Assembly (NCBI GenBank): GCA_020536535.1
Contig: JAHLWZ010000281.1
Coordinates: 1-38,484 of the forward strand
DNA: 38,484 nt
Reading direction: 5' to 3'
Origin: Pelomyxa schiedti
Lineage: Eukaryota > Protista > Evosea
This document shows positions 26,265 through 37,483 of this stretch, one piece after another; within the stretch, counting starts at the first letter, position 1, and each line of letters begins with the position of its first letter. Below the pieces are notes generated by a model. The model had not been told where the DNA came from, searched no databases, and was given only the letters and a program-made list of their open reading frames with translations. A program made the translations under genes and the position numbers.

Positions 26265-27333
26265 CAGAGATTGATTCCTCCACTTTTACGTTGGTTCTGG
26301 CACTGGTCTCAAAGAATGATGCTGTGAGTGCCTTAGAGTCGCGGTTGTCGCTTGCCTCTCGGATTCAAGGTCAACCTTGTTTAAGCACACCTTGAAGGAA
26401 AAAGTCAGTTTGGGAATCGGCAACGTTCACATACAGGGGAGCTGGAAATGCCTTTCACGTGAAGTGTTTAGAGAACCAAAAGATTCCTTGTAGGTGATGG
26501 AGTACGCAATGAGAAACCCATAGGAGTGGCGGAAGTGATCCTAAGGCATTCCGCAATACTCCTCCCCTCCTGGGAATTGTCACCACTTGTGATTGTTGTG
26601 TTGTGTGGAACTTATGTTGTATCTAACAACTGTACCACGCAATTCTTTCTGGCAACCCTCAGCGATTCATTCGAGGGAATATTAAAGGGGAAATTTATAG
26701 GTTCATGAACCTATAAACACACATAAGAATCCTCCAAGAGCGGGTCATATTCATTAACGCTGTTCGAGAAGAATCAACTTGAGAGTAGTCAAGTTCTGCC
26801 TTACATACAATGTACCGAATAAATTGGACGCACAATGCAGATTTACCCACAGTGCCTCTCCCTGTTATCGCAACTTATACTCGTCATCCACTTGTGCCGG
26901 TGCTGGGTTGTGGGATGGCCCACAAGATGGTNNNNNNNNNNNNNNNNNNNNNNNNNNNNNNNNNNNNNNNNNNNNNNNNNNNNNNNNNNNNNNNNNNNNN
27001 NNNNNNNNNNNNNNNNNNNNNNNNNNNNNNNTGTACCGAATAAATTGGACGCACAATGCAGATTTACCCACAGTGCCTCTCCCTGTTATCGCAACTTATA
27101 CTCGTCATCCACTTGTGCCGGTGCTGGGTTGTGGGATGGCCCACAAGATGGTCTGATGAACGCGATCTGTAAGACGCAGCCGTCCCAGCCGCGGTGCAAT
27201 CTTATTTTTCTTGTGGGGTTCGTTGGGGGGTGACCTCCTGGTGGGACGGGGCTTGCTCTGCTCCACCAATTATGGGAGTGTGCCCTACTGATTGCCCTGG
27301 CACTGCACTGCTGCCTCATGTGGTCTGCCCCAT
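26265..27333 (-). pseudogene. Ras-family small GTPase pseudogene
   Basis: G1 GRGTVGKSALCVQFI is preceded by a frameshifted EYKL; G2 EYDPLLEDSY; G3 LLDT..GEEY followed by an in-frame TAG (26541-26543); YGFLIAYSIT; G4 NKVDL; G5 FFETSAR lies in another frame. Confidence 0.8.
26811..27152. other. 100-N scaffold gap flanked by an identical 121-bp duplication (assembly artefact)
   Basis: 26811-26931 is identical to 27032-27152; N run at 26932-27031. Confidence 0.9.
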
Positions 27334-27401: not shown

Positions 27402-28640
27402 CTACAACAATGTGGTGACCCTAATGTGTCTTGGCTCAGAGTGAAATGAGATTGTGCAGAGATGCAAGCCACTTGCATCTCTGAGCTCAAGGGTCTTTTC
27501 TCTGTGACCATTGTATTCATTTTTGTGGAAGATGAGTCCAGAGTGTGCAAGTGCAGAGACATTGTGGGACTGCGCAAGTAGGACCCTGAGTGGTGCCTCA
27601 GTGTGGTTGCAATCCCACACTTCAACAGAACCGTCAATCTTTGAGATGCAAAACAGAATGGAGCTCAACTGGCTCAACTGTTGTGCCTGTGTGGAAATGC
27701 CTCTGAGAGTATCAGAAGTATCATCAACCCTGTACACAATCCCACGGGACCGTGGTCCCACATCTAGAACAAGAAAAAGATATCGCTGCTGTGTGTCAGC
27801 TGTGGAGTGCTTTGGCATGTAAAGCGCTGATGGTTGATTTTTGCCACCCAGCATCTCAAACAGAGGCACCCACTTTTTCGAACTGACCACTGACAGATGC
27901 CCAGTTGAATATGTTCTGCGGATGTCAATGACAATGAACAAATTGAAGTCGACCCATTCACATTCAACAAGGAGAAGGGCTTCATCTGGAATCGAATTGT
28001 TGAAGGAAATCAAAGTGCACAGCCCCAACTCGCCATCAGATAGATGATAAACAGGAACACGTGTGTCACATTCCACAGTGCTGCTGCCGGAATCCACCAA
28101 ATTGGCAACAGCAAGGACACTTCCAATGGTGGTCTTAAGCCACCACTTCTGATTGCAATTCTGAACAGAGCACGCAAGCCCACGGCCGCTGTCTCTTGTA
28201 AACAGCAGCCTTTGTTGCTTGGTAACCGCGTTGATCAACGAAAAACTCTTGGTGTTGGGCACAGCACCAGGTGCCTCCATCACCACGTGGGCTGGATCAC
28301 ACACCTCAATTGTGGGTATGGCATCAACAATTGGAGTTGGCCAGCTCCAGGACTGGATCAACTTTGTTGGCCTTGTCACACTTCTCAATGGCAGAGACAC
28401 ACCAAATGTGAACAACAACATTGTTTCACATGTGTCGTCATCGAGTGACGTCATGGCAAGTGCGCCAAACACGACCTCGGTGAGTTGGAGGCACCACTCC
28501 CACAATGGCGACGTGGCCAGCGGCGACAGAGACATGAAATTGCGCGCGGGGCTGTTTGCTCCGCATCGCGGGTGCGACGACATCGCCAACGCGAGAAGTT
28601 GCTGCCGCGCATGCTGTCCCCCGACGATGTCGATCATCAT
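27402..28640 (-). CDS. Intronless HPRCG-motif protein 3
   Basis: ATG at 28640; ARQQLLALAMSSHPRCGANSPA...LWEWC; FNNSIPDEALL; QLSQLSSILFCI...VEVWDCN..PLRV...AHSGLIF. Confidence 0.78.
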   Translation of the reverse strand: MMIDIVGGQHARQQLLALAMSSHPRCGANSPARNFMSLSPLATSPLWEWCLQLTEVVFGALAMTSLDDDTCETMLLFTFGVSLPLRSVTRPTKLIQSWSWPTPIVDAIPTIEVCDPAHVVMEAPGAVPNTKSFSLINAVTKQQRLLFTRDSGRGLACSVQNCNQKWWLKTTIGSVLAVANLVDSGSSTVECDTRVPVYHLSDGELGLCTLISFNNSIPDEALLLVECEWVDFNLFIVIDIRRTYSTGHLSVVSSKKWVPLFEMLGGKNQPSALYMPKHSTADTQQRYLFLVLDVGPRSRGIVYRVDDTSDTLRGISTQAQQLSQLSSILFCISKIDGSVEVWDCNHTEAPLRVLLAQSHNVSALAHSGLIFHKNEYNGHREKTLELRDASGLHLCTISFHSEPRHIRVTTLL

Positions 28641-28889
28641 TTTTGCTTTGATTCCACGTGGAGTCAACGAATAATGATTGCCTTTTTTTTTTTTAATTTG
28701 ACCGTGTGGTGGGGGAACACACAGTTGTGAGGATAAAAATTGGGATGGGCCAGAGTGTGGCCAAACATCCACGAGGCACTGGAGTTAGTTTGCAATCAGC
28801 AAAAAATCTACGCCATCCCTTACGGTCATCAGCTGTAGAAATACCCCAAGCGCAAGGTGATCCTTCCTTCACCCGTGTGACTCGCTTTT

Positions 28890-31604
28890 TGTTGCGTGTG
28901 CATTGGGCTGGTGACGGACCCCGTGACGCTGCCGTGGTGCACCCACACCGTGTGCCGCCTGTGCGCGGGGCCCCTCCTGGGCCTCCTCCCACTCAGCAGG
29001 GGCACTGCCCCTCCCACCGCCCCCGCCCTGCAGCTGCCCGGATGCACCACCTCCTCCTCCTCCTCTTCCTCTTCGGGGTCCAGCAGCCCCACCATGGTGG
29101 GGGGTTGTGTGGGGGGCGTGGTTCTGGGGTGCCCAGTGTGCGGGGCCGGGGGACCGGAGGACAAGCGGGGGGGGCTCGGGACCCAATCCCAGCAGCGGGG
29201 GGGCGTGCGCGACGTGGGGGCACTCGTGCGGAACGAGGAGGTGGCGGCCAGGGCTGACAAGGTCAGGCTGGAATTGGTGTCGGCGACGATGTGCAACGTG
29301 TGCGATGAGTCGGGACTCATGGTATCCTGTTGTATATGTTGCCCGCTGGGTTATATAGCTTATGTAGTTGTAAATATATAGAGTTTGGGTATAGGCGGTT
29401 TCTCATCCTTGGTTTCAGACAAAAGCTGTTGTAATCTGCCAAGTTTGCGAGGCTCCTTTTTGTGCAAAGTGCTTCAGAGATACACACAAAGGGAAAATGA
29501 AATCCCACACCTCTGTTCCAGTTGTAAGATTTTTCTTTTGTCCCTCTCATTTCAACACCCCAAACAGACAGCGGAACTATCAGCCTTCAAGCCACTAATG
29601 TGCCGTGAGCACAACGAACCCTGCAAAATTTGGTGCAAGGATGACAGCACTGCTGTTTGTTACCTCTGCGTTTCTCTCAGCGAATCTCCTCACAGGGGGC
29701 ACGCAACGATTGCAACAAATCAAGCCGCATTGTGCGTTGCACTCACTTGCTCGACCGGTAAAATTCATTTAACTTTTCATCAGGTCCCTCAAAAAAGAGT
29801 TGACGGCAACAATCGCTTCACTGGCTAGTTTGATGGAAAATTGCCATAAGAGAATTGCTGAGTTAACCGAAATGTCAGCAGCAATAGAGAGGGTTCGTGC
29901 ACGAACCCTCTCTATTCCATTTCCATTTACAACCTTTCTCAGCAACGAGTTGATTCGAAGCAAGTAATTTCCTCGTTGATGAGGGTCCTGGTTGAAATGA
30001 TTTCATCAACGGAAAAGAGGCTCCTTGACTCGACTGATCAACACACTTCCAGACTATGTTATGTTATCTTTTCCCAATGATTTTTGGGGCAAACTTCGCC
30101 TGACCTATCAACAGTGTCATCAATCAATGAACGCCATTGGGAACTTGTTTCAGTCATTGAGCAAGCAAATACTTTTTCCGGGCATGCTGAAAAGGTGTCT
30201 TGCAATAAAGATGACGGCTGGATCATGTCCAAACAGTTCATATTGCAAAGAATGATGGTTGTTGTCCTTGGTGGATGGGTTCTTTCCCATGATCACTAAT
30301 TTTTTGACAGGAAACTCTGAACACATTGACCAACGTTGAATTGCCCGAAGTGCCCCCTCCTACCATCTCTTTTGACAGCCCAAGTGATCTCCAATCCCAA
30401 TTGAAGAAACTTACCGTAACATCCCTCATATATTTCTGTGTAAAATCAATTTGTGTGCAGGATTCTTGTCACATAACATCATCAGAACCCATTGAAAAAT
30501 ACGAAGAAGTGGTGACCACAGAAAGGACTCTTTCTGGAGAAGACTACATCATTTCTGGGAATGAGTGTTTTGATGCCAGTAAATCTGCAATCACGCAATA
30601 CCGCAATGTTGTTGTTCAAAGCGGGGCTATTCTGACTGTGAAGCCTTGGGATGGATCCTCTGGTGGTTCAATCTACATCAAGTATACTTGAACTGACTGT
30701 TACGCACGGTGTTAACTCTTCCTCCCAAACTCCTCCCAAACCCAAACAACAAAAATAAAAAGGTGCTCCACATTCACAGTGCAGATGGGCGGCACTGTTG
30801 ATGTCACAGGGAAGGGATACAGAGGTGGTGTTGCTCCAAGAAAATACAGAAATACCGCACCACAGGGGGAATCATCAATTGGGATTGGGTGCCCATCCAC
30901 AGAACCCAATGGAGGTGGCGGTGGCGGTGGTGTTGGCTCTGATTCGTATGGTTCTACAGGTGGAGGTGGAGGGTGCTATGGTATGCCGGGTCTTTCTTTT
31001 TTCCATGAACTAATGAGACCCCCCACTTCTCGATTGAAGGAACCCGAGGGAGGGATTCTCCACCCAACACCTACCGAAAGACAGGACCCCACCCAGGCGG
31101 CAAGGGAGGGAACGTTGTTCCTCCCTCAATCATCAACAACACGCTGCCCACACTTGGATCGGGCGGTGGTGCTGGTGACCCGTGTGTACCCCTCCGGCCA
31201 TAGTAATTCTAAACTAGTCACACACTAGGTATGGCTACACAGCAGGATCAGGTGGAGCGGGAGGCGGAGCCGTTGTGATTGAGGCCTCAGAGATCGACAT
31301 ACAGGGCACCATCCAGGCCAATGGGAACCCAGGTGGCAGCGGCAAGAGCTACGGGTCAGGCGGCGGGGGCGGCAGCGGGGGCCTCATTGCGCTGAGGCCA
31401 TCCCGGTGCGTCGCACTGGGTGCCACCGGGACACTGACGGCCAGCGGGGGCGAGGGTGGGAGCTGCGAGGCAGGTCCATTGGGGCACCAGGGGATATGCA
31501 GCAGGGGAGGGTGTGGGGGTGATGGATGGATATGCCTAAGCAACAGGACTGCGCGGTCACTCCTGGGAAAGATAGTGCCGGCAATGTCATCCTCAAACAT
31601 CTAA
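28890..31604 (+). CDS. TRIM-like protein A (RING, B-box1, B-box2, coiled coil, glycine-rich domain); 5' start apparently missing
   Basis: RING CxxC..PWCTHTVCRLC...CPVC; B-box1 CNVC..CQVC...CAKC...H..H; B-box2 CREH...CKDD..CYLC...HRGH; Gly-rich C-terminus. An in-frame TGA lies just before the RING with no upstream ATG or AG acceptor. Confidence 0.75.
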
Positions 31605-31907
31605 ATGCAGAGTGGAAACAAAAAGGGCAGAAACCACCAAGAGATTCTACTGGCTGAATATTCATAATAAAATAGTCAACAGACTGGAACACGGTAATTT
31701 GCTCAGGATGGCTATTTTTGAAACCCTCTACTTACAATTAAGCCCCTGTTCAGCCTTGCAGTGCGGTGTACCCAACACATACTTTCAGTAGGTAGTTCCC
31801 TCAATCAGAGATCGTTTGTTCCCGCCAACCGAAACAGTTTATTCCTCGAAATTTTCCAAAACACTTTTCCAGAAAACCCGGAACCCCAAATCAACATCTT
31901 CCACTGA

Positions 31908-33887
31908 ATGTTAGCCAACGACACGGACCCGTTGACGTCGCTCTGCCCTGGTACGCCCACGTCGTGTGCCGCCTGTGTGTCCCAGTCAGTACCTCCTCCG
32001 CCACCTCCTCCTCGTCGTTGTACTCCCCCACCACAACCACCACCTCCTCCTGCTCCTGCTCCCGCTCCCGCTCCTGCTCCTCCTGCTCCTCCTCCTCCTC
32101 CGCTAAGGGTAGCAACTTTCAAAGGCCCTATGATCGAAACTTGCCAGCGGAGAAGGGCAGAGTTGAACAACATGTCAGCAGCTATCGAAAAGGTTCGTGC
32201 AAGATTCATTTCCATTTGGAAATTCTGATTACATTCTCAGCAAAGAGTCGATTCGAAGAAAGAAATTTCCTCCATGATGAGGGAACTTGTTGAAATAATT
32301 TCAGCAACTGAAAAGAGGCTCCTTAACTCGACTGACAAACACGCTTCCAGACTATGTTATGTTATCTTTTCCCACTGTTTTGTGTCAACTTCGCGAACTA
32401 ACCTCAACAGTGTCATCAATCGATGAACGCAATCAGGAACTTGATTCAGTTGTTGAGCAAATACAGACTTTTTCCGGGCATGCTGAAAAGAACTCTTGTG
32501 ATCAAGAAGAGATATCGCAAAAAATGATGGTTGTTCGTTGTGGTTCTTGCCTATGATCACTAATTTTTGACAGAAAACTCTGCACACATTGACCAACCTT
32601 AAATTGCCCGAAGTGCCCCCTCCTACCATCTCTTTCAACAGCCCAAGTGATCTCCAATCCCAATTGAAGAAGCTTGCAGTACGATCGCTCATCATTTCTG
32701 TTTAAAATCAATTTGTGTGCAGGATCTTTGTCACATAACATCATCAGACCCCATTGTAAAATTGGAAACCATGGAAAGGACTCTTTCTGAAGAAGACTAC
32801 ATCATTTCTGGGAATGAGTGTTTTGATGCCAGTAAATCTTCAACAAAGCAATACCGCAATGTTGTTGTTCAGAGCGGTGCCACTCTGACTGTGAAGCCTT
32901 GGGATGGATCCTCTGGTGGTTCAATCCGAATAAAGTATACTTGTCACTGTCGCTTTCGGTGGTGTTAACCCTTCCTCCCAAACCCAAACAACAACCAAAA
33001 GGTGTGCCACATTCACAGTAGAGAGCGGGGGTATTGTTGATGTCACAGGGAAAGGATACAGAGGTGGTGTTGCTCCAACAACTTCTGGCAATTCTGCACC
33101 ACAAGGGGAATCGTCAACCGGGTTTGGGTGTGTATACACAGAACCCAATGGAGGTGGCGGTGGCGGTGGTATTGCCTCTGTGAAGTTTGGTTCAGCAGGC
33201 GGAGGTGGAGGAGGCTATGGTATGCCGGGTCCTTTCTTCCCTGGCCCGAACTAATGAGACCCCCACCCACTGCTCAAATTCAGGAACCCAAGGGGCAGAT
33301 GCTGAGCCCAACACCTACCCTAGCGGGAAAGGAGGACCCCACACAGGTGGCAAGGGAGGGGATGCCTTTCCTCCCGGAGCCATCTACAGCCACAACGAGC
33401 TGCCCATACTTGGATCTGGCGGTGGCGCCGGCGACCCGTGTGTATACACCTCCCCCGTTCCCACTTGTCGTGCATGGTCGTTCTGAACTAGTCGCACACT
33501 AGGTGTGGCTACACAGCAGGATCAGGTGGAGCGGGAGGCGGAGCCGTCGTGATCCGGGCCTCAGAGATCGACATACAGGGCACCATCCAGGCCAATGGGA
33601 ACCCAGGCGGCAGCGGCAAGGGCTTCGGGTCAGGCGGCGGGGGCGGCAGCGGGGGCCTCGTCGTGCTGGAGGCGTCCCGGAGCATCACGCTGGGCCTCGC
33701 TGGGGCGCTGGTGGCCAGCGGGGGGGAAGGTGGGGGCGCCCAGGCACACGAGGGCATTAACTGTGGCATGTGCAGCAAGGGAGGGTGTGGGGGCGATGGG
33801 TGGGTATTCGTGCGCCAGTGGAATAGTGAGGGTGATATCGTGGCTAAGACACTCTTGGGAAAGATAGTGCCGGTACTGTCGGTATAG
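31908..33887 (+). CDS. TRIM-derived protein B: RING frameshifted, B-boxes deleted, Pro-rich N-terminus, coiled coil, glycine-rich domain
   Basis: ATG at 31908 reads through poly-Pro directly into MIETCQRRRAELNNMSAAIEK (the coiled coil of A and C). A RING relic LPWYAHVVCRLC lies in another frame. Downstream exons are collinear with A and C and stay in frame. Confidence 0.65.
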
Positions 33888-34041
33888 TCGCCAGCACAAA
33901 AACGGAATTATTGGCTGTTGGTTGTTTGTTGGCCTGGTCACACTCAAACACTACCCCAGTTCCCGCTCCGCCAAAACACCAACTTTTCCTGATGATCAAA
34001 AGGCTTTTTTATCATCAAAAAAACCCGAAACAACGCAGCGA

Positions 34042-36880
34042 ATGGCGGCCAACAAGAACAATAACACGGTGGGAGGTGGTGGAGACCCGTTCGATGGGGG
34101 ACTGACATGCAGCGTGTGCATTGGGCTGGTGACGGACCCCGTGACGCTTCCCTGGTGCACCCACACCGTGTGCCGCCTGTGCGCCGGGACCCTCCTGGGC
34201 CTCCTCCCACTCAGCAGGGGCACTGCCCCTCCCACCGCCCCCGCCCCGCAGCTGCCCGGACGCACCTCCTCCTCTTCGGGGTCCAGCAGCCCCACCATGG
34301 CGGGGGGTGCCGGGGGAGTGGTTCTGGGGTGCCCAGTGTGCGGGGCCGGGGGCCCCCACGATCAGCCGGGGCTCGAATCCCAGCAGCGGGGGGGCGTGCG
34401 CGACGTGGGGGCACTCGTGCGGAACGAGGAGGTGGCGGCCAGGGCTGACAAGGCCAGGCTGGAATTGGTGTCGGCGATGATGTGCAATGTGTGCGATGAC
34501 TCAGGTCTCAAGGTATCTGTTGTAAATAGTGCCCCGCCAGGTTATTTCTCTTGGTTCTACATATGTAATTTGGGATGGGTAGGTTCTCATTCTTGGTTTC
34601 AGACAAAGGCTGTTGTAATGTGTCAACTTTGCGAGGCTCCTTTTTGTGCAAAGTGCTTCAGCGACACACACAAAGGGAAAATGAAATCACACACCACTGT
34701 TCCAGTTGTAAGATTTTTCTTTTATCCCTCTCTTTCTTGTTCAACACCCCAAGCAGACAGCGGAACTATCAGCCTTCAAGCCAATAATGTGCCGTGAGCA
34801 CAACGAACCCTGCAAAATTTGGTGCAAGGATGACAGCACTGCCGTTTGTTACCTCTGCGTTTCTCTCAGCGAATCTCCTCACAGAGGGCACACGACGATT
34901 GCAACAAATCAAGCCGCATTGTGCGTTGCACTCTCGCTCATCCATACGGTAAAATTCATTTAACTTTTCATCAGGTCCCTCAAAAAAGAGTTCGCTGCCA
35001 CAATCGCTTCACTGTCTGGCCTGATCGAAAATTGTCATAAGAGAATTGCTGAGTTAACCGAAATGTCAGAAGCAATAGAAAAGGTTCGTGCAAGATTCAT
35101 TTTCAACAACCTGACTGATTACATTCTCAGCAAAGAGTCGATTCGAAGAAAGAAATTTCTTTACTGATGAGGGGACTGGTTGAAATGATTTCATCAACTG
35201 AAAAGAGGCTCCTTGACTCGACTGATCAACATGCTTCCAAACTCTGTTATGATTTCTTTCCCACTGTGTCAGCTTCGCCTGACCTATCAACAGTGTCATC
35301 AATCGATGAACACCATCGGGAACTTGCTTCAGTCATTGAGCAAGCAAAAACTTTTTCCGGGCATGCTGAAAAGGTGTCTTCCAATCAAGATGACAGTTGG
35401 ATAATGTCCAAACAGTTCATATTGCAAAGAATGATGGTTGTCCTTGGTGGATGGGTTCTTTCCCATGATCACTAATTTTTGGACAGGAAACTCTGAACAC
35501 ATTGACCACCATTGAATTGCCCGAAGTGCCCCCTCCTACCATCTCTTTCGACAGCCCAAGTGATCTCCAATCCCAATTGAAGAAACTTACCGTAACATCC
35601 CTCATATATTTCTGTTTAAAATCATCACAAATTTGTGTGCAGGATTCTTGTCACATAACATCATCAGAACCCATTGAAGAAGTGGTGACCACAGAAAGGA
35701 CTCTTTCTGGAGAAGACTACATCATTTCTGGGAATGAGTGTTTTGATGCCAGTAAATCTTCAACAAAGCAATACCGCAATGTTGTTGTTCAGAGCGGTGC
35801 CACTCTGACTGTGAAGCCTTGGGATGGATCCTCTGGTGGTTCAATCCACATCAAGTATACTTGAACTTAATGTGACTTGCAGTGGTGTTAACCCTTCCTC
35901 CCAAACCCAAACAACAAAACAAAAAGGTGTTCCACATTCACAGTGCGGAGTGGGGGTATTGTCGACGTTACAGGCAAGGGATACAGAGGTGGTGTTGCTC
36001 CAACAACTTCCGGCAATACCGCACCACAAGGGGAATCATCAACCGGGATTGGGTGCGCATCCACAGAACCAAACGGTGGAGGCGGCGGCGGTGGTGTTGG
36101 CTCTGGTTCGTATGGTTCTGCAGGTGGAGGTGGAGGAGGCTATGGTATGCCAGGATATTTCTTCTATTTCTTCCCTGCACTAATTAGCCCCACCCACTGC
36201 TAAATCTCAGGAGCCCGAGGGAAAGATGCTGCGCCCAATACCGGCAACAGAATGCACAACCCAGGCGGCAAGGGAGGGAATGTCGTTCCTCCTGCCATCA
36301 TCAACAACACGCTGCCCATACTTGGATCGGGTGGTGGTGCTGGTGACCCGTGTGTACCCCTCCATTTTCCCAATGCCGATAGTAATTCTAAAAGAGACAC
36401 AGGTACAGCACCCACCAAGCCGGGTCCGGTGGGTCAGGAGGTGGAGCCGTTGTGATTGAGGCCTCAGAGATCGACATACAGGGCACCATCCAGGCCAATG
36501 GGAACCCAGGCGGCAGCGGCAAGGGCTACGGGTCAGGCGGCGGGGGCGGCAGCGGGGGCCTCATCGTGCTGGCCCCATCCCTGCGTGTCACACTGGGCAC
36601 CACCGGGACACTGACGGCCAGCGGGGGCCAGGGCGGGCGCTGCGAGGAAGCCCCATCGTTTCCCGGGATATGCAGCAGGGGAGGGTGTGGGGGTGATGGG
36701 TGGATATGCATTAGTCGAAGGAATCGGAGTTCGTGGGGCAGGGCTGTGACGCAGACACACCCTAACTCCAAAAATTTCCCAATTTACGCGTCAAATCGGA
36801 ACCAAAGTGAGCCTCCAAATTGCTTAACTAGTGCACACTTTGGACAAAGTGGAGGGATTTCCAAAGTGGCACCGCTTTGA
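34042..36880 (+). CDS. TRIM-like protein C, full length (RING, B-box1, B-box2, coiled coil, glycine-rich domain)
   Basis: MAANKNNN...LTCSVC..PWCTHTVCRLC...CPVC (C3HC4 RING), both B-boxes, coiled coil, then LTVKPWDGSSGG..VDVTGKGYRGG..QGES..NGGGGGGG..LGSGGGAG..GTIQANG..GSGGGGGSGG..GGDGWI. Confidence 0.85.
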
Positions 36881-37086
36881 GCATTCTCAAATCGGGCACA
36901 AATTGGGGATTTTCCCAGGTTGCCTACAAATTGGAAGACATAATTTATTTTTTTTTTTCCCCTTACACCTGTGTGGTTGCGTGGTTGCGTGGTTGCTAGC
37001 TGGTGGTCCAGTAACAGAGAGGCTGTCACGGTTGTACTCTACAAAATAATTAAAATAAAATAAGATATGCGGAAAGAACAAACCTG

Positions 37087-37483
37087 CAGGCAGACTCTCT
37101 TGCTCTTTGGCAAAGGTGCTTACATCAAATAATTGTCATGCGAACCTGTGTGGATGTTAGAAGCAGAAAGCCAATAAAAAGGACAAACCAAGTTTGCTGC
37201 CAACTAGCGGAAGTCTGGAACATAACAGCAGCTTGTCAATCTGTGCCTTGGTTAGCTGGGGGAAAAAAAAGGGAGAAGGACATACCGGAGTCGACAACTG
37301 GGATCCAGGCAGACTCTCTTGCTCTTTGCAAGGGACAAAAGCGAATATATCAAATAATGGTTGCCTGTTGTCATGTGAACCTGTGTGGATGTTAGAAACA
37401 GAAAGCCAATAAATGGGACAAACCGGCAAACTCGCTGAAGTCATGAACTTAACAGCAGCTTGTTACAAAATCTATGCATTGGT
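37087..37483. repeat. Imperfect non-coding tandem repeat, period about 219 bp, at least 2 copies, running into a gap
   Basis: caggcagactctcttgctcttt...gaacctgtgtggatgttagaa.cagaaagccaataaa...taacagcagcttgt starts at both 37087 and 37306. Confidence 0.85.

What the first reader, a model, noticed from the sequence alone, without database searches (positions are those of the whole stretch)
28890..36880. Tandem array of TRIM-like E3 ligases ending in a bacterial-surface-type glycine-rich (polyglycine-II-like) domain
Seen: three tandem paralogues. The complete copy C has the canonical tripartite order C3HC4 RING, B-box1, B-box2, coiled coil. Established: TRIM/RBCC proteins usually carry PRY-SPRY, NHL, MATH, PHD-bromo, FN3 or ARF C-terminal domains, which bind substrate. 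Here that position holds a roughly 250-aa domain of beta strands alternating with Gly runs (LTVKPWDGSSGG, IVDVTGKGYRGG, QGES, NGGGGGGG, LGSGGGAG, GGGAVVIEASEIDIQGTIQANG, GGGGGSGG, LTASGG.GG, GGDGWI). I recognise this pattern from glycine-rich domains of bacterial surface proteins, and it is reminiscent of the ALK/LTK polyglycine-II domain. I know of no described TRIM class with this fusion. Inference: a cytosolic ubiquitin-ligase receptor family, possibly built from a horizontally acquired domain and used to sense or tag intracellular microbes or viruses in a phagotrophic amoeba.
Basis: partly seen in the sequence, partly recalled or inferred. Interest (0 to 1): 0.85.

Follow-up and report, generated by a model that had tools for sequence, protein, structure and literature searches.

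The report
Protist TRIM ligases with polyglycine tips
Three neighbouring genes of the anaerobic amoeba Pelomyxa schiedti belong to an apparently undescribed family of TRIM-type ubiquitin ligases, also found in other amoebae and a metamonad, whose target-binding end has a fold otherwise used in bacterial surface proteins and viral fibres; what it binds is untested.

Summary
Copy C is an 11-exon, 752-aa RING/B-box1/B-box2/coiled-coil gene ending in a ~270-aa glycine-rich domain. Copy A lost its start codon by a ~208-bp deletion; copy B lost RING and B-boxes. The domain folds confidently (pLDDT 90-94) as a short beta-helix capped by a polyglycine-II bundle, arranged like phage gp38. It is not the ALK/LTK domain. 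It has no Pfam or PDB match and only sub-cutoff, collinear similarity to the myxobacterial AgmC N-domain. The fusion is not Pelomyxa-specific: it occurs in Mastigella, Pyxidicula, Anaeramoeba (Metamonada) and metagenomic protists, as single ORFs or transcripts. The same domain also caps BTB-BACK, TRAF-like and PUB proteins. Eukaryotic copies group apart from prokaryotic ones (SH-aLRT 99/95), so recent transfer from bacteria is not supported. Paralogues differ mostly in loops between glycine motifs (3-4x more replacements; dN/dS about 1). Best reading: an old protist class of cytosolic ubiquitin-ligase receptors. A microbial target is plausible (~0.4) but untested; no RNA data were available. 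The scan noted TRIM/TRAF genes with glycine-rich ends elsewhere in this genome; several are described as ALK-type, a family that does not match here. I found no paper on this class.

The parts
28890..31604 (+). Copy A (Pelo_3686): 11 exons, open from the RING to the stop, but the start codon region is deleted (junction near 28894); at best translated from an internal Met without a complete RING
   Evidence: in-frame TGA at 28878-28880
30530..31538 (+). Gly-rich beta-helix/polyglycine-II domain of A (exons 8-11)
31908..33887 (+). Copy B (Pelo_3687): 8 exons, 530 aa; Pro-rich N-terminus, coiled coil and Gly-rich domain; RING and both B-boxes lost
31923..31983 (+). Out-of-frame remnant of the RING-coding sequence in B
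   Evidence: local alignment to C exon 1; frames
32783..33812 (+). Gly-rich domain of B
34042..36880 (+). Copy C, the complete gene: exons 34042-34512, 34603-34707, 34757-34920, 34975-35083, 35131-35245, 35294-35436, 35487-35591, 35643-35854, 35927-36144, 36211-36349, 36403-36880
34108..34341 (+). C3HC4 RING of C (ligands at aa 23, 26, 39, 41, 44, 47, 97, 100); Gly follows the last Cys
34483..34692 (+). B-box 1 of C, split by intron 1
34790..34891 (+). B-box 2 of C
34975..35591 (+). Helical, probably coiled-coil region (exons 4-6) and linker (exon 7) of C
   Evidence: composition; the Anaeramoeba homologue's model aligns with animal TRIM RBCC models
35703..36712 (+). Gly-rich domain of C (exons 8-11): beta-helix plus about 10-12 Gly motifs forming a PGII bundle
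   Evidence: models built on the paralogous A domain
36758..37483 (+). Dispersed mobile-like repeat with a sharp 5' end inserted in C's last exon; replaces about 12 conserved C-terminal codons; an empty-site version exists in the reads' contigs
   Evidence: (table 7)

Best explanation
These are members of an old, uncatalogued class of protist TRIM-like E3 ubiquitin ligases whose C-terminal target-recognition module is a beta-helix capped by a polyglycine-II bundle. Shown: the gene structure, the zinc-ligand patterns, the predicted fold, the distribution, and loop-focused divergence. Inferred from animal TRIM biology (own knowledge): the coiled coil forms an antiparallel dimer that presents two Gly-rich domains; B-box 2 drives higher-order assembly on repetitive targets; the RING recruits E2~ubiquitin and tags the bound target for proteasome or autophagy. 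Inferred from gp38 (PMC12032242; 10.1101/2023.11.25.568672): the Gly motifs are a rigid scaffold and the loops between them set specificity, so tandem paralogues differ in what they bind. The target is most likely a cytosol-exposed surface, either non-self (bacteria, symbionts, viral particles, leaked phagosome contents; about 0.4 overall) or a host protein. The array is in birth-and-death turnover: C intact, A and B RING-less (decoy, heterodimer partner or decaying).
For: Gene models and Pfam. Same architecture in Mastigella, Pyxidicula, four Anaeramoeba proteins and metagenomic protists, including intronless single ORFs and transcriptome ORFs. The domain also ends BTB-BACK, TRAF-like, PUB and coiled-coil proteins; 44 of 46 eukaryotic carriers end within 41 residues of it and only 2 of 46 have a hydrophobic N-terminus, against 22 of 35 prokaryotic carriers. 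Models pLDDT 90 and 94. Top 2 of 48,161 chains for the Gly-rich part are pure PPII bundles, 2pne (80 of 81 residues, rmsd 3.1, Z 6.0) and 7jjv; the whole domain matches beta-helices (1rwr Z 10.6) and gp38 (Z 7.0-7.7, 128-131 aligned). Replacement changes in loops are 0.20-0.31 per site against 0.06-0.09 elsewhere (p<1e-6) with equal silent rates. P. schiedti has cytosolic symbionts (PMC10579272).
Against: No RNA run was available, no E3 activity and no ligand are known. C's RING has a long insertion and Gly, not Arg/Lys, after the last Cys, which could weaken activity. Loop dN/dS (0.8-1.3) is not significantly above 1, so relaxed constraint explains it equally well. Several loop residues are conserved across all eukaryotes and absent in prokaryotes (S122, P139-N140-x-Y142, Y179, Y219, S221, S269), which fits a conserved ligand better than an arms race. 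Fold-match Z-scores are middling. I could not read model coordinates, so neither PGII torsion angles nor the position of the loops were checked.
Confidence: 0.7

Rival explanations
1. Housekeeping ligase or adaptor: the eukaryotic domain binds one conserved endogenous ligand (a protein, modification or glycan), and loop variation among the tandem copies is drift after duplication.
For: Eukaryote-wide conserved loop residues; low to moderate copy number (about 10-12 loci); loop dN/dS not above 1; two of three tandem copies are damaged.
Against: Independent expansions in Pelomyxa, Anaeramoeba, foraminifera and a metagenomic clade; indels and replacements concentrate in loops while the framework is kept; all identified hosts are phagotrophs (own knowledge).
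Confidence: 0.3
2. Non-catalytic scaffold: C's RING is degenerate, and the proteins act as RING-independent receptors (for example autophagy adaptors) or as structural oligomers.
For: 49-aa insertion and Gly after the last Cys in C; RING-less members A, B, C676 and Bbox-CC-only relatives.
Against: All eight ligands are kept in C, the RING/B-box region has dN/dS 0.36, and relatives have compact RINGs with Arg/Lys after the last Cys and Pfam scores over cut-off.
Confidence: 0.15
3. Recent horizontal capture of a bacterial surface domain by Pelomyxa and a lineage-specific fusion.
For: The domain is widespread in bacterial secreted proteins; Pelomyxa carries endosymbionts (PMC10579272).
Against: Three introns lie inside the domain, with matching positions in the ~45%-identical C372 and C553 paralogues. 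The fusion exists in Mastigella, Pyxidicula and Anaeramoeba. The Pelomyxa domains sit among other eukaryotic ones, split from 43 prokaryote-type rows by SH-aLRT 99 (95 in a second sample).
Confidence: 0.05
4. Artefact: adjacent separate genes joined by the reader, or a collapsed assembly.
For: No RNA evidence; near-identical copies on short contigs C1911, C4637, C354, C4119 show local assembly trouble.
Against: Open frame through ten canonical introns with no intergenic gap; intronless single-ORF homologues; transcriptome-derived homologues.
Confidence: 0.02

Closest known systems
Animal TRIM/RBCC E3 ligases with two B-boxes (TRIM45, MID1, TRIM71 and TRIM33 types)
   Same: RING, B-box1, B-box2, helical coiled-coil region, then one C-terminal domain; the Anaeramoeba homologue's model aligns with these over residues 1-385; NCBI names C 'tripartite motif-containing protein 46' and the Anaeramoeba proteins 'bonus isoform c-related'.
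   Different: The C-terminal domain is none of the catalogued ones. Marin 2012 (PMC3503706) found only the MATH-type subfamily A outside animals. Whether this RBCC is orthologous to animal TRIMs was not tested.
AgmC N-terminal domain (NCBIfam NF047640) and unnamed bacterial or archaeal secreted Gly-rich domains
   Same: Collinear profile matches (exon 8 at profile 142-200, exon 11 at 302-400; E to 1e-9); predicted structures TM 0.75-0.83 over 255-278 residues.
   Different: Scores 15-37 bits against a cut-off of 275; lacks profile positions 1-141; cytosolic context; eukaryote-specific loop residues; separate branch in trees.
Phage gp38 adhesin (S16 6f45, PP01 9v85)
   Same: Short beta-helix base built from N- and C-terminal segments plus a PGII bundle; conserved Gly motifs alternate with variable loops (Z 7.0-7.7, 128-131 aligned, rmsd 3.5-3.8).
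   Different: 12-20% identity, middling Z, no sequence match; beta-helix strands are interleaved between Gly motifs; homology not shown.
ALK/LTK glycine-rich domain (PF12810) and Gly_rich_2 (PF21722)
   Same: Gly runs forming a PGII bundle.
   Different: No profile match here; Foldseek to 7lir only E about 6; base is a beta-helix.
Springtail antifreeze proteins (2pne, 7jjv)
   Same: Best structural matches to the Gly-rich part.
   Different: Pure PPII bundles, secreted, no beta-helix; shared geometry only.

Membership tests
TRIM/RBCC | N-terminal C3HC4 RING | tested here: met
   All eight ligands in C; Pfam RING families E 4e-5 but below cut-off because of a 49-aa insertion; homologues over cut-off. 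Not met in B; incomplete in A.
TRIM/RBCC | One or two B-boxes directly after the RING | tested here: met
   PF22586/PF00643 over cut-off on exons 2 and 3
TRIM/RBCC | Coiled coil after B-box 2 | tested here: inconclusive
   Helix-former-rich ~130 aa, weak periodicity on a model with a retained intron; homologue's model aligns with TRIM models at TM 0.32-0.43
TRIM/RBCC | E3 ligase activity and dimerisation | not testable with these tools
   Needs biochemistry; Gly after the last RING Cys is a caveat
TRIM/RBCC | Common descent of the RBCC module with animal TRIMs | not tested
   No RBCC tree was built
Catalogued TRIM classes (SPRY, NHL, MATH, PHD-bromo, FN3, filamin, ARF) | A catalogued C-terminal domain | tested here: not met
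   No Pfam family on the C-terminal exons or on 63 of 64 homologous domains
ALK/LTK GRD (PF12810) | Profile match over the curated cut-off | tested here: not met
   17 matches in the genome, none on C281 or on this family's contigs
ALK/LTK GRD (PF12810) | Structural match to the ALK GRD | tested here: not met
   7lir E 5.9-6.1, TM under 0.11; not listed by VIA-align
AgmC_N (NF047640) | Score at or above 275 bits over the 412-position model | tested here: not met
   15-37 bits per exon, positions 142-400 only; joined protein not scanned against NCBIfam
Polyglycine-II bundle domains | Ordered Gly-rich extended helices packed in layers | tested here: met
   Gly runs at pLDDT above 90 without alpha or beta structure; top matches 2pne and 7jjv. 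Prediction only; torsion angles could not be read.
gp38 adhesin family | Sequence homology and N-terminal fibre-attachment domain | tested here: not met
   No sequence match; only topological likeness

The most novel reading that the evidence does not exclude
An ancient, pan-protist cytosolic pattern-recognition system: the adhesin fold that bacteria, phages and giant viruses display on their surfaces is turned inward and mounted on TRIM, BTB and TRAF-like ubiquitin scaffolds, and variable loops let phagotrophic protists recognise and ubiquitinate cytosolic bacteria, symbionts or viral particles, a TRIM5/TRIM21-like immunity outside animals.
Probability: 0.3. Interest if true: 0.87.

Novelty: new variant of a known kind. 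Interest (0 to 1): 0.63.

Why it matters
TRIM diversity outside animals was reported as essentially one MATH-type subfamily (PMC3503706), and Dictyostelium has a single TRIM (PMC5758549). This is a second RBCC class shared by two supergroups, with a domain that has no Pfam family and no solved structure. It also puts a beta-helix/polyglycine-II adhesin fold in the eukaryotic cytosol, repeatedly attached to ubiquitin machinery. If the target is non-self, it gives a direct, testable handle on cell-autonomous immunity and symbiont control in anaerobic protists. If the target is a host molecule, it is still a new substrate-receptor family for E3 ligases.

Tried and rejected
ALK/LTK identity: rejected. 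Sequence matches in PDB were only to artificial Gly-Ser linkers. Pfam on the domain: one marginal PF21722 hit among 64. RNA evidence: no RNA run holds the stretch; the four runs laid were genomic contigs and showed no splice joints. The AU test of one eukaryotic clade did not finish in two runs, and the careful bootstrap tree did not finish, so support values are SH-aLRT from quick trees. The search for related loci on genome contigs could not build a pattern; viral contigs gave one weak locus, not followed up. A third homologue search added little. A one-base frameshift as the cause of A's missing start was considered and dropped once C354 showed a ~208-bp deletion. Positive selection on loops could not be shown. 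Paper searches found nothing on this class or on AgmC's structure. Joined models were used only inside scripts for frame checks and codon counts; full-length searches and folds used database proteins returned by the tools.
Full report
OBSERVATION. The window is contig C281 of a 52-Mb eukaryotic assembly; database names identify it as Pelomyxa schiedti. I built gene models by hand. Copy C runs 34042-36880 in 11 exons with ten GT-AG introns of 47-90 bp and one open frame of 752 aa. Copies A (28890-31604) and B (31908-33887) share intron positions and are also open. Exon-by-exon Pfam scans give RING families on exon 1, a B-box on exon 2 and a B-box on exon 3, and nothing on exons 5, 6 and 8-11. 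All eight C3HC4 ligands are present in C, with 49 residues between ligands 6 and 7 and Gly after the last Cys. B is identical to NCBI Pelo_3687, and Pelo_3686 is my A model from residue 69; NCBI's C model keeps intron 10 and loses the last third of the domain.

STATE OF THE THREE COPIES. Only C has a full start. A has a stop 12 nt before its RING. A related stretch on contig C354 has the same upstream DNA plus about 208 bp that hold the start codon seen in C, so A lost its start by deletion. B keeps the homologous ATG, but the RING survives only as an out-of-frame remnant and both B-boxes are gone. At 36758 a dispersed repeat with a sharp 5' end (at least 25 copies, 83-99% identical) interrupts C's last exon; contigs from three runs continue at that point like A and B, so an empty-site version exists (table 7). 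This is a birth-and-death pattern.

FAMILY IN THE GENOME. A profile of the domain finds it on C281 (three times), C372, C553, C605, C902, C676, C178, C911 and on the short near-copies C1911 and C4637. C372, C553, C605, C902, C178 and C911 all show RING, two B-boxes and a helical region upstream; C676 shows the B-boxes without a RING. PF12810 (ALK/LTK) matches 17 other loci and PF21722 four, none on these contigs. So this is a separate Gly-rich family from the ALK-type ones that other readers noted in this genome.

WHAT THE DOMAIN IS. It has no Pfam family and no sequence match in PDB apart from artificial linkers. NCBIfam gives collinear but sub-cut-off matches to the N-terminal domain of myxobacterial AgmC. 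AlphaFold2 on a 64-row alignment gives mean pLDDT 90.3, pTM 0.87: strands at 12-71, 192-207, 230-248 and 278-281, with long ordered non-alpha, non-beta Gly segments between them. The whole model matches right-handed beta-helices (FHA secretion domain Z 10.6, bactofilin Z 9.0) and phage gp38 tips (Z 7.0-7.7 over about 130 residues). Folding the Gly-rich part alone (pLDDT 94.4) brings two pure polyproline-II bundles to the top of 48,161 chains: 2pne (80 of 81 residues, rmsd 3.1, Z 6.0) and 7jjv (Z 5.0). These Z-scores are middling, but the identity of the top hits is what the hypothesis predicts. The fold is therefore a short beta-helix capped by a PGII bundle, the arrangement described for gp38 (PMC12032242). 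Predicted structures with TM 0.75-0.83 are bacterial secreted proteins; Foldseek also finds prasinovirus, Pandoravirus and Orpheovirus fibre-like proteins at E 1e-13 to 1e-6.

DISTRIBUTION. A profile of exon 11 against 1.84 billion representatives and two word-index searches show the same RING/B-box/B-box/coiled-coil/domain order in Mastigella eilhardi (Archamoebae), Pyxidicula operculata (testate amoeba), four Anaeramoeba ignava proteins (Metamonada) and unnamed metagenomic eukaryotes. Three of these are intronless single ORFs and several come from transcriptomes, which removes the 'two genes' objection for the family. The domain also ends BTB-BACK proteins (Anaeramoeba, a metagenome) and, in foraminifera, coiled-coil/FN3-like, TRAF-like, PUB and CAP-Gly proteins (FN3-like and TRAF-like are my reading of the sequence, not Pfam hits). 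In eukaryotes it is almost always terminal and lacks a signal-like N-terminus (2 of 46, against 22 of 35 prokaryote-type proteins, a hydropathy proxy only).

ORIGIN. In a 94-row tree all 47 non-secreted eukaryotic domains, the Bodo saltans surface protein and two rows of unknown origin (P0009, P0030) lie on one side of a branch with SH-aLRT 99; 43 prokaryote-type rows and a choanoflagellate secreted protein lie on the other. A 48-row sample gives 95. The AU test and bootstrap did not finish, metagenomic rows were labelled by architecture or sequence type, and Gly-rich alignments carry composition bias, so this is moderate evidence. It argues against a recent bacterial gift to Pelomyxa. It does not tell ancient inheritance from later spread among eukaryotes, and an ancient bacterial source is still likely.

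EVOLUTION OF THE TANDEM COPIES. Between A and C, dN/dS is 0.36 in RING/B-boxes, 0.33 in the coiled coil, 0.31 in the beta-helix and 0.80 in the loops between Gly motifs; with B the loops reach 1.15-1.3. Replacement changes are 3-4 times denser in loops (Fisher p<1e-6) while silent changes are not, but loop dN does not differ significantly from dS. I defined the loops from the model and consensus, so the boundaries are approximate. Across eukaryotes some loop residues are kept and are rare in prokaryotes (S122, P139, N140, Y142, Y179, Y219, S221, I267, S269), pointing to a conserved patch beside the variable ones.

MECHANISM. By established TRIM biology (own knowledge; PMC5758549) the C-terminal domain binds the target, the coiled coil dimerises, B-box 2 multimerises and the RING transfers ubiquitin. 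In gp38 the PGII bundle is a stable platform whose loops set specificity (10.1101/2023.11.25.568672). Combining these, the most likely working model is a cytosolic ubiquitin-ligase receptor whose loops choose the target (0.7). The repeated fusion of the same domain to BTB-BACK, TRAF-like and PUB scaffolds is the strongest independent hint of a substrate-receptor role. Whether the target is non-self (about 0.4 overall; P. schiedti has bacteria and methanogens free in its cytosol, PMC10579272) or a host molecule (about 0.3) is open. No step after the fold has been shown.

COMPARISON AND NOVELTY. It works like a two-B-box TRIM and meets the sequence tests for RING and B-boxes, but not for any catalogued C-terminal class, ALK/LTK GRD, AgmC_N or gp38 membership. 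Marin 2012 (PMC3503706) lists only MATH-type TRIMs outside animals, and my paper searches found no description of this fusion (the library lacks most subscription papers). The scan itself has noted TRIM or TRAF genes with Gly-rich ends on other pieces of this genome; some first-reader notes may be paralogues of this family. Verdict: new variant of a known kind, interest 0.63.

Noticed in passing
window 36758-37483: Dispersed repeat of at least 720 bp with an invariant 5' end (starts CACCCTAACTCC) at 25 or more loci; looks like a DNA transposon end; insertion into C appears polymorphic (empty-site contigs in three runs).
   Followed up: partly
window 27402-28640 (- strand): Intronless ~412-aa ORF divergently placed next to copy A, no Pfam match; already noted by another reader as an HPRCG-motif family.
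   Followed up: no
window 26865-27160 (- strand): Ras-like GTPase fragment, duplicated around an N gap; probably a local assembly artefact.
   Followed up: no
G000:C354:21990-22766: Partial duplicate of the 5' end of this gene family that keeps the start codon missing from A but breaks off within exon 1.
   Followed up: partly
G000 contigs C45, C800, C908, C444, C997 and others: 17 loci with a true ALK/LTK-type glycine-rich domain, a separate family from the one studied here.
   Followed up: no
P0106, P0059, P0225, P0247, P0259, P0240: The same domain ends BTB-BACK, TRAF-like, PUB and CAP-Gly proteins in Anaeramoeba and foraminifera; deserves its own family model.
   Followed up: partly
L027:714-1442 and L033:1385-3010: In metagenomic protist contigs the TRIM-like gene lies head to head with a GH25 lysozyme-like gene (weak hit) in one case and another B-box gene in the other.
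   Followed up: no
(BFVD hits): Prasinovirus, Pandoravirus and Orpheovirus collagen-like or fibre proteins carry the same predicted fold (E 1e-13 to 1e-6).
   Followed up: no
P0025, P0158, P0220, P0223, P0224, P0226, P0290: A well-supported clade of intronless, AT-rich metagenomic eukaryote genes with one degenerate B-box, coiled coil and this domain; host unidentified.
   Followed up: partly
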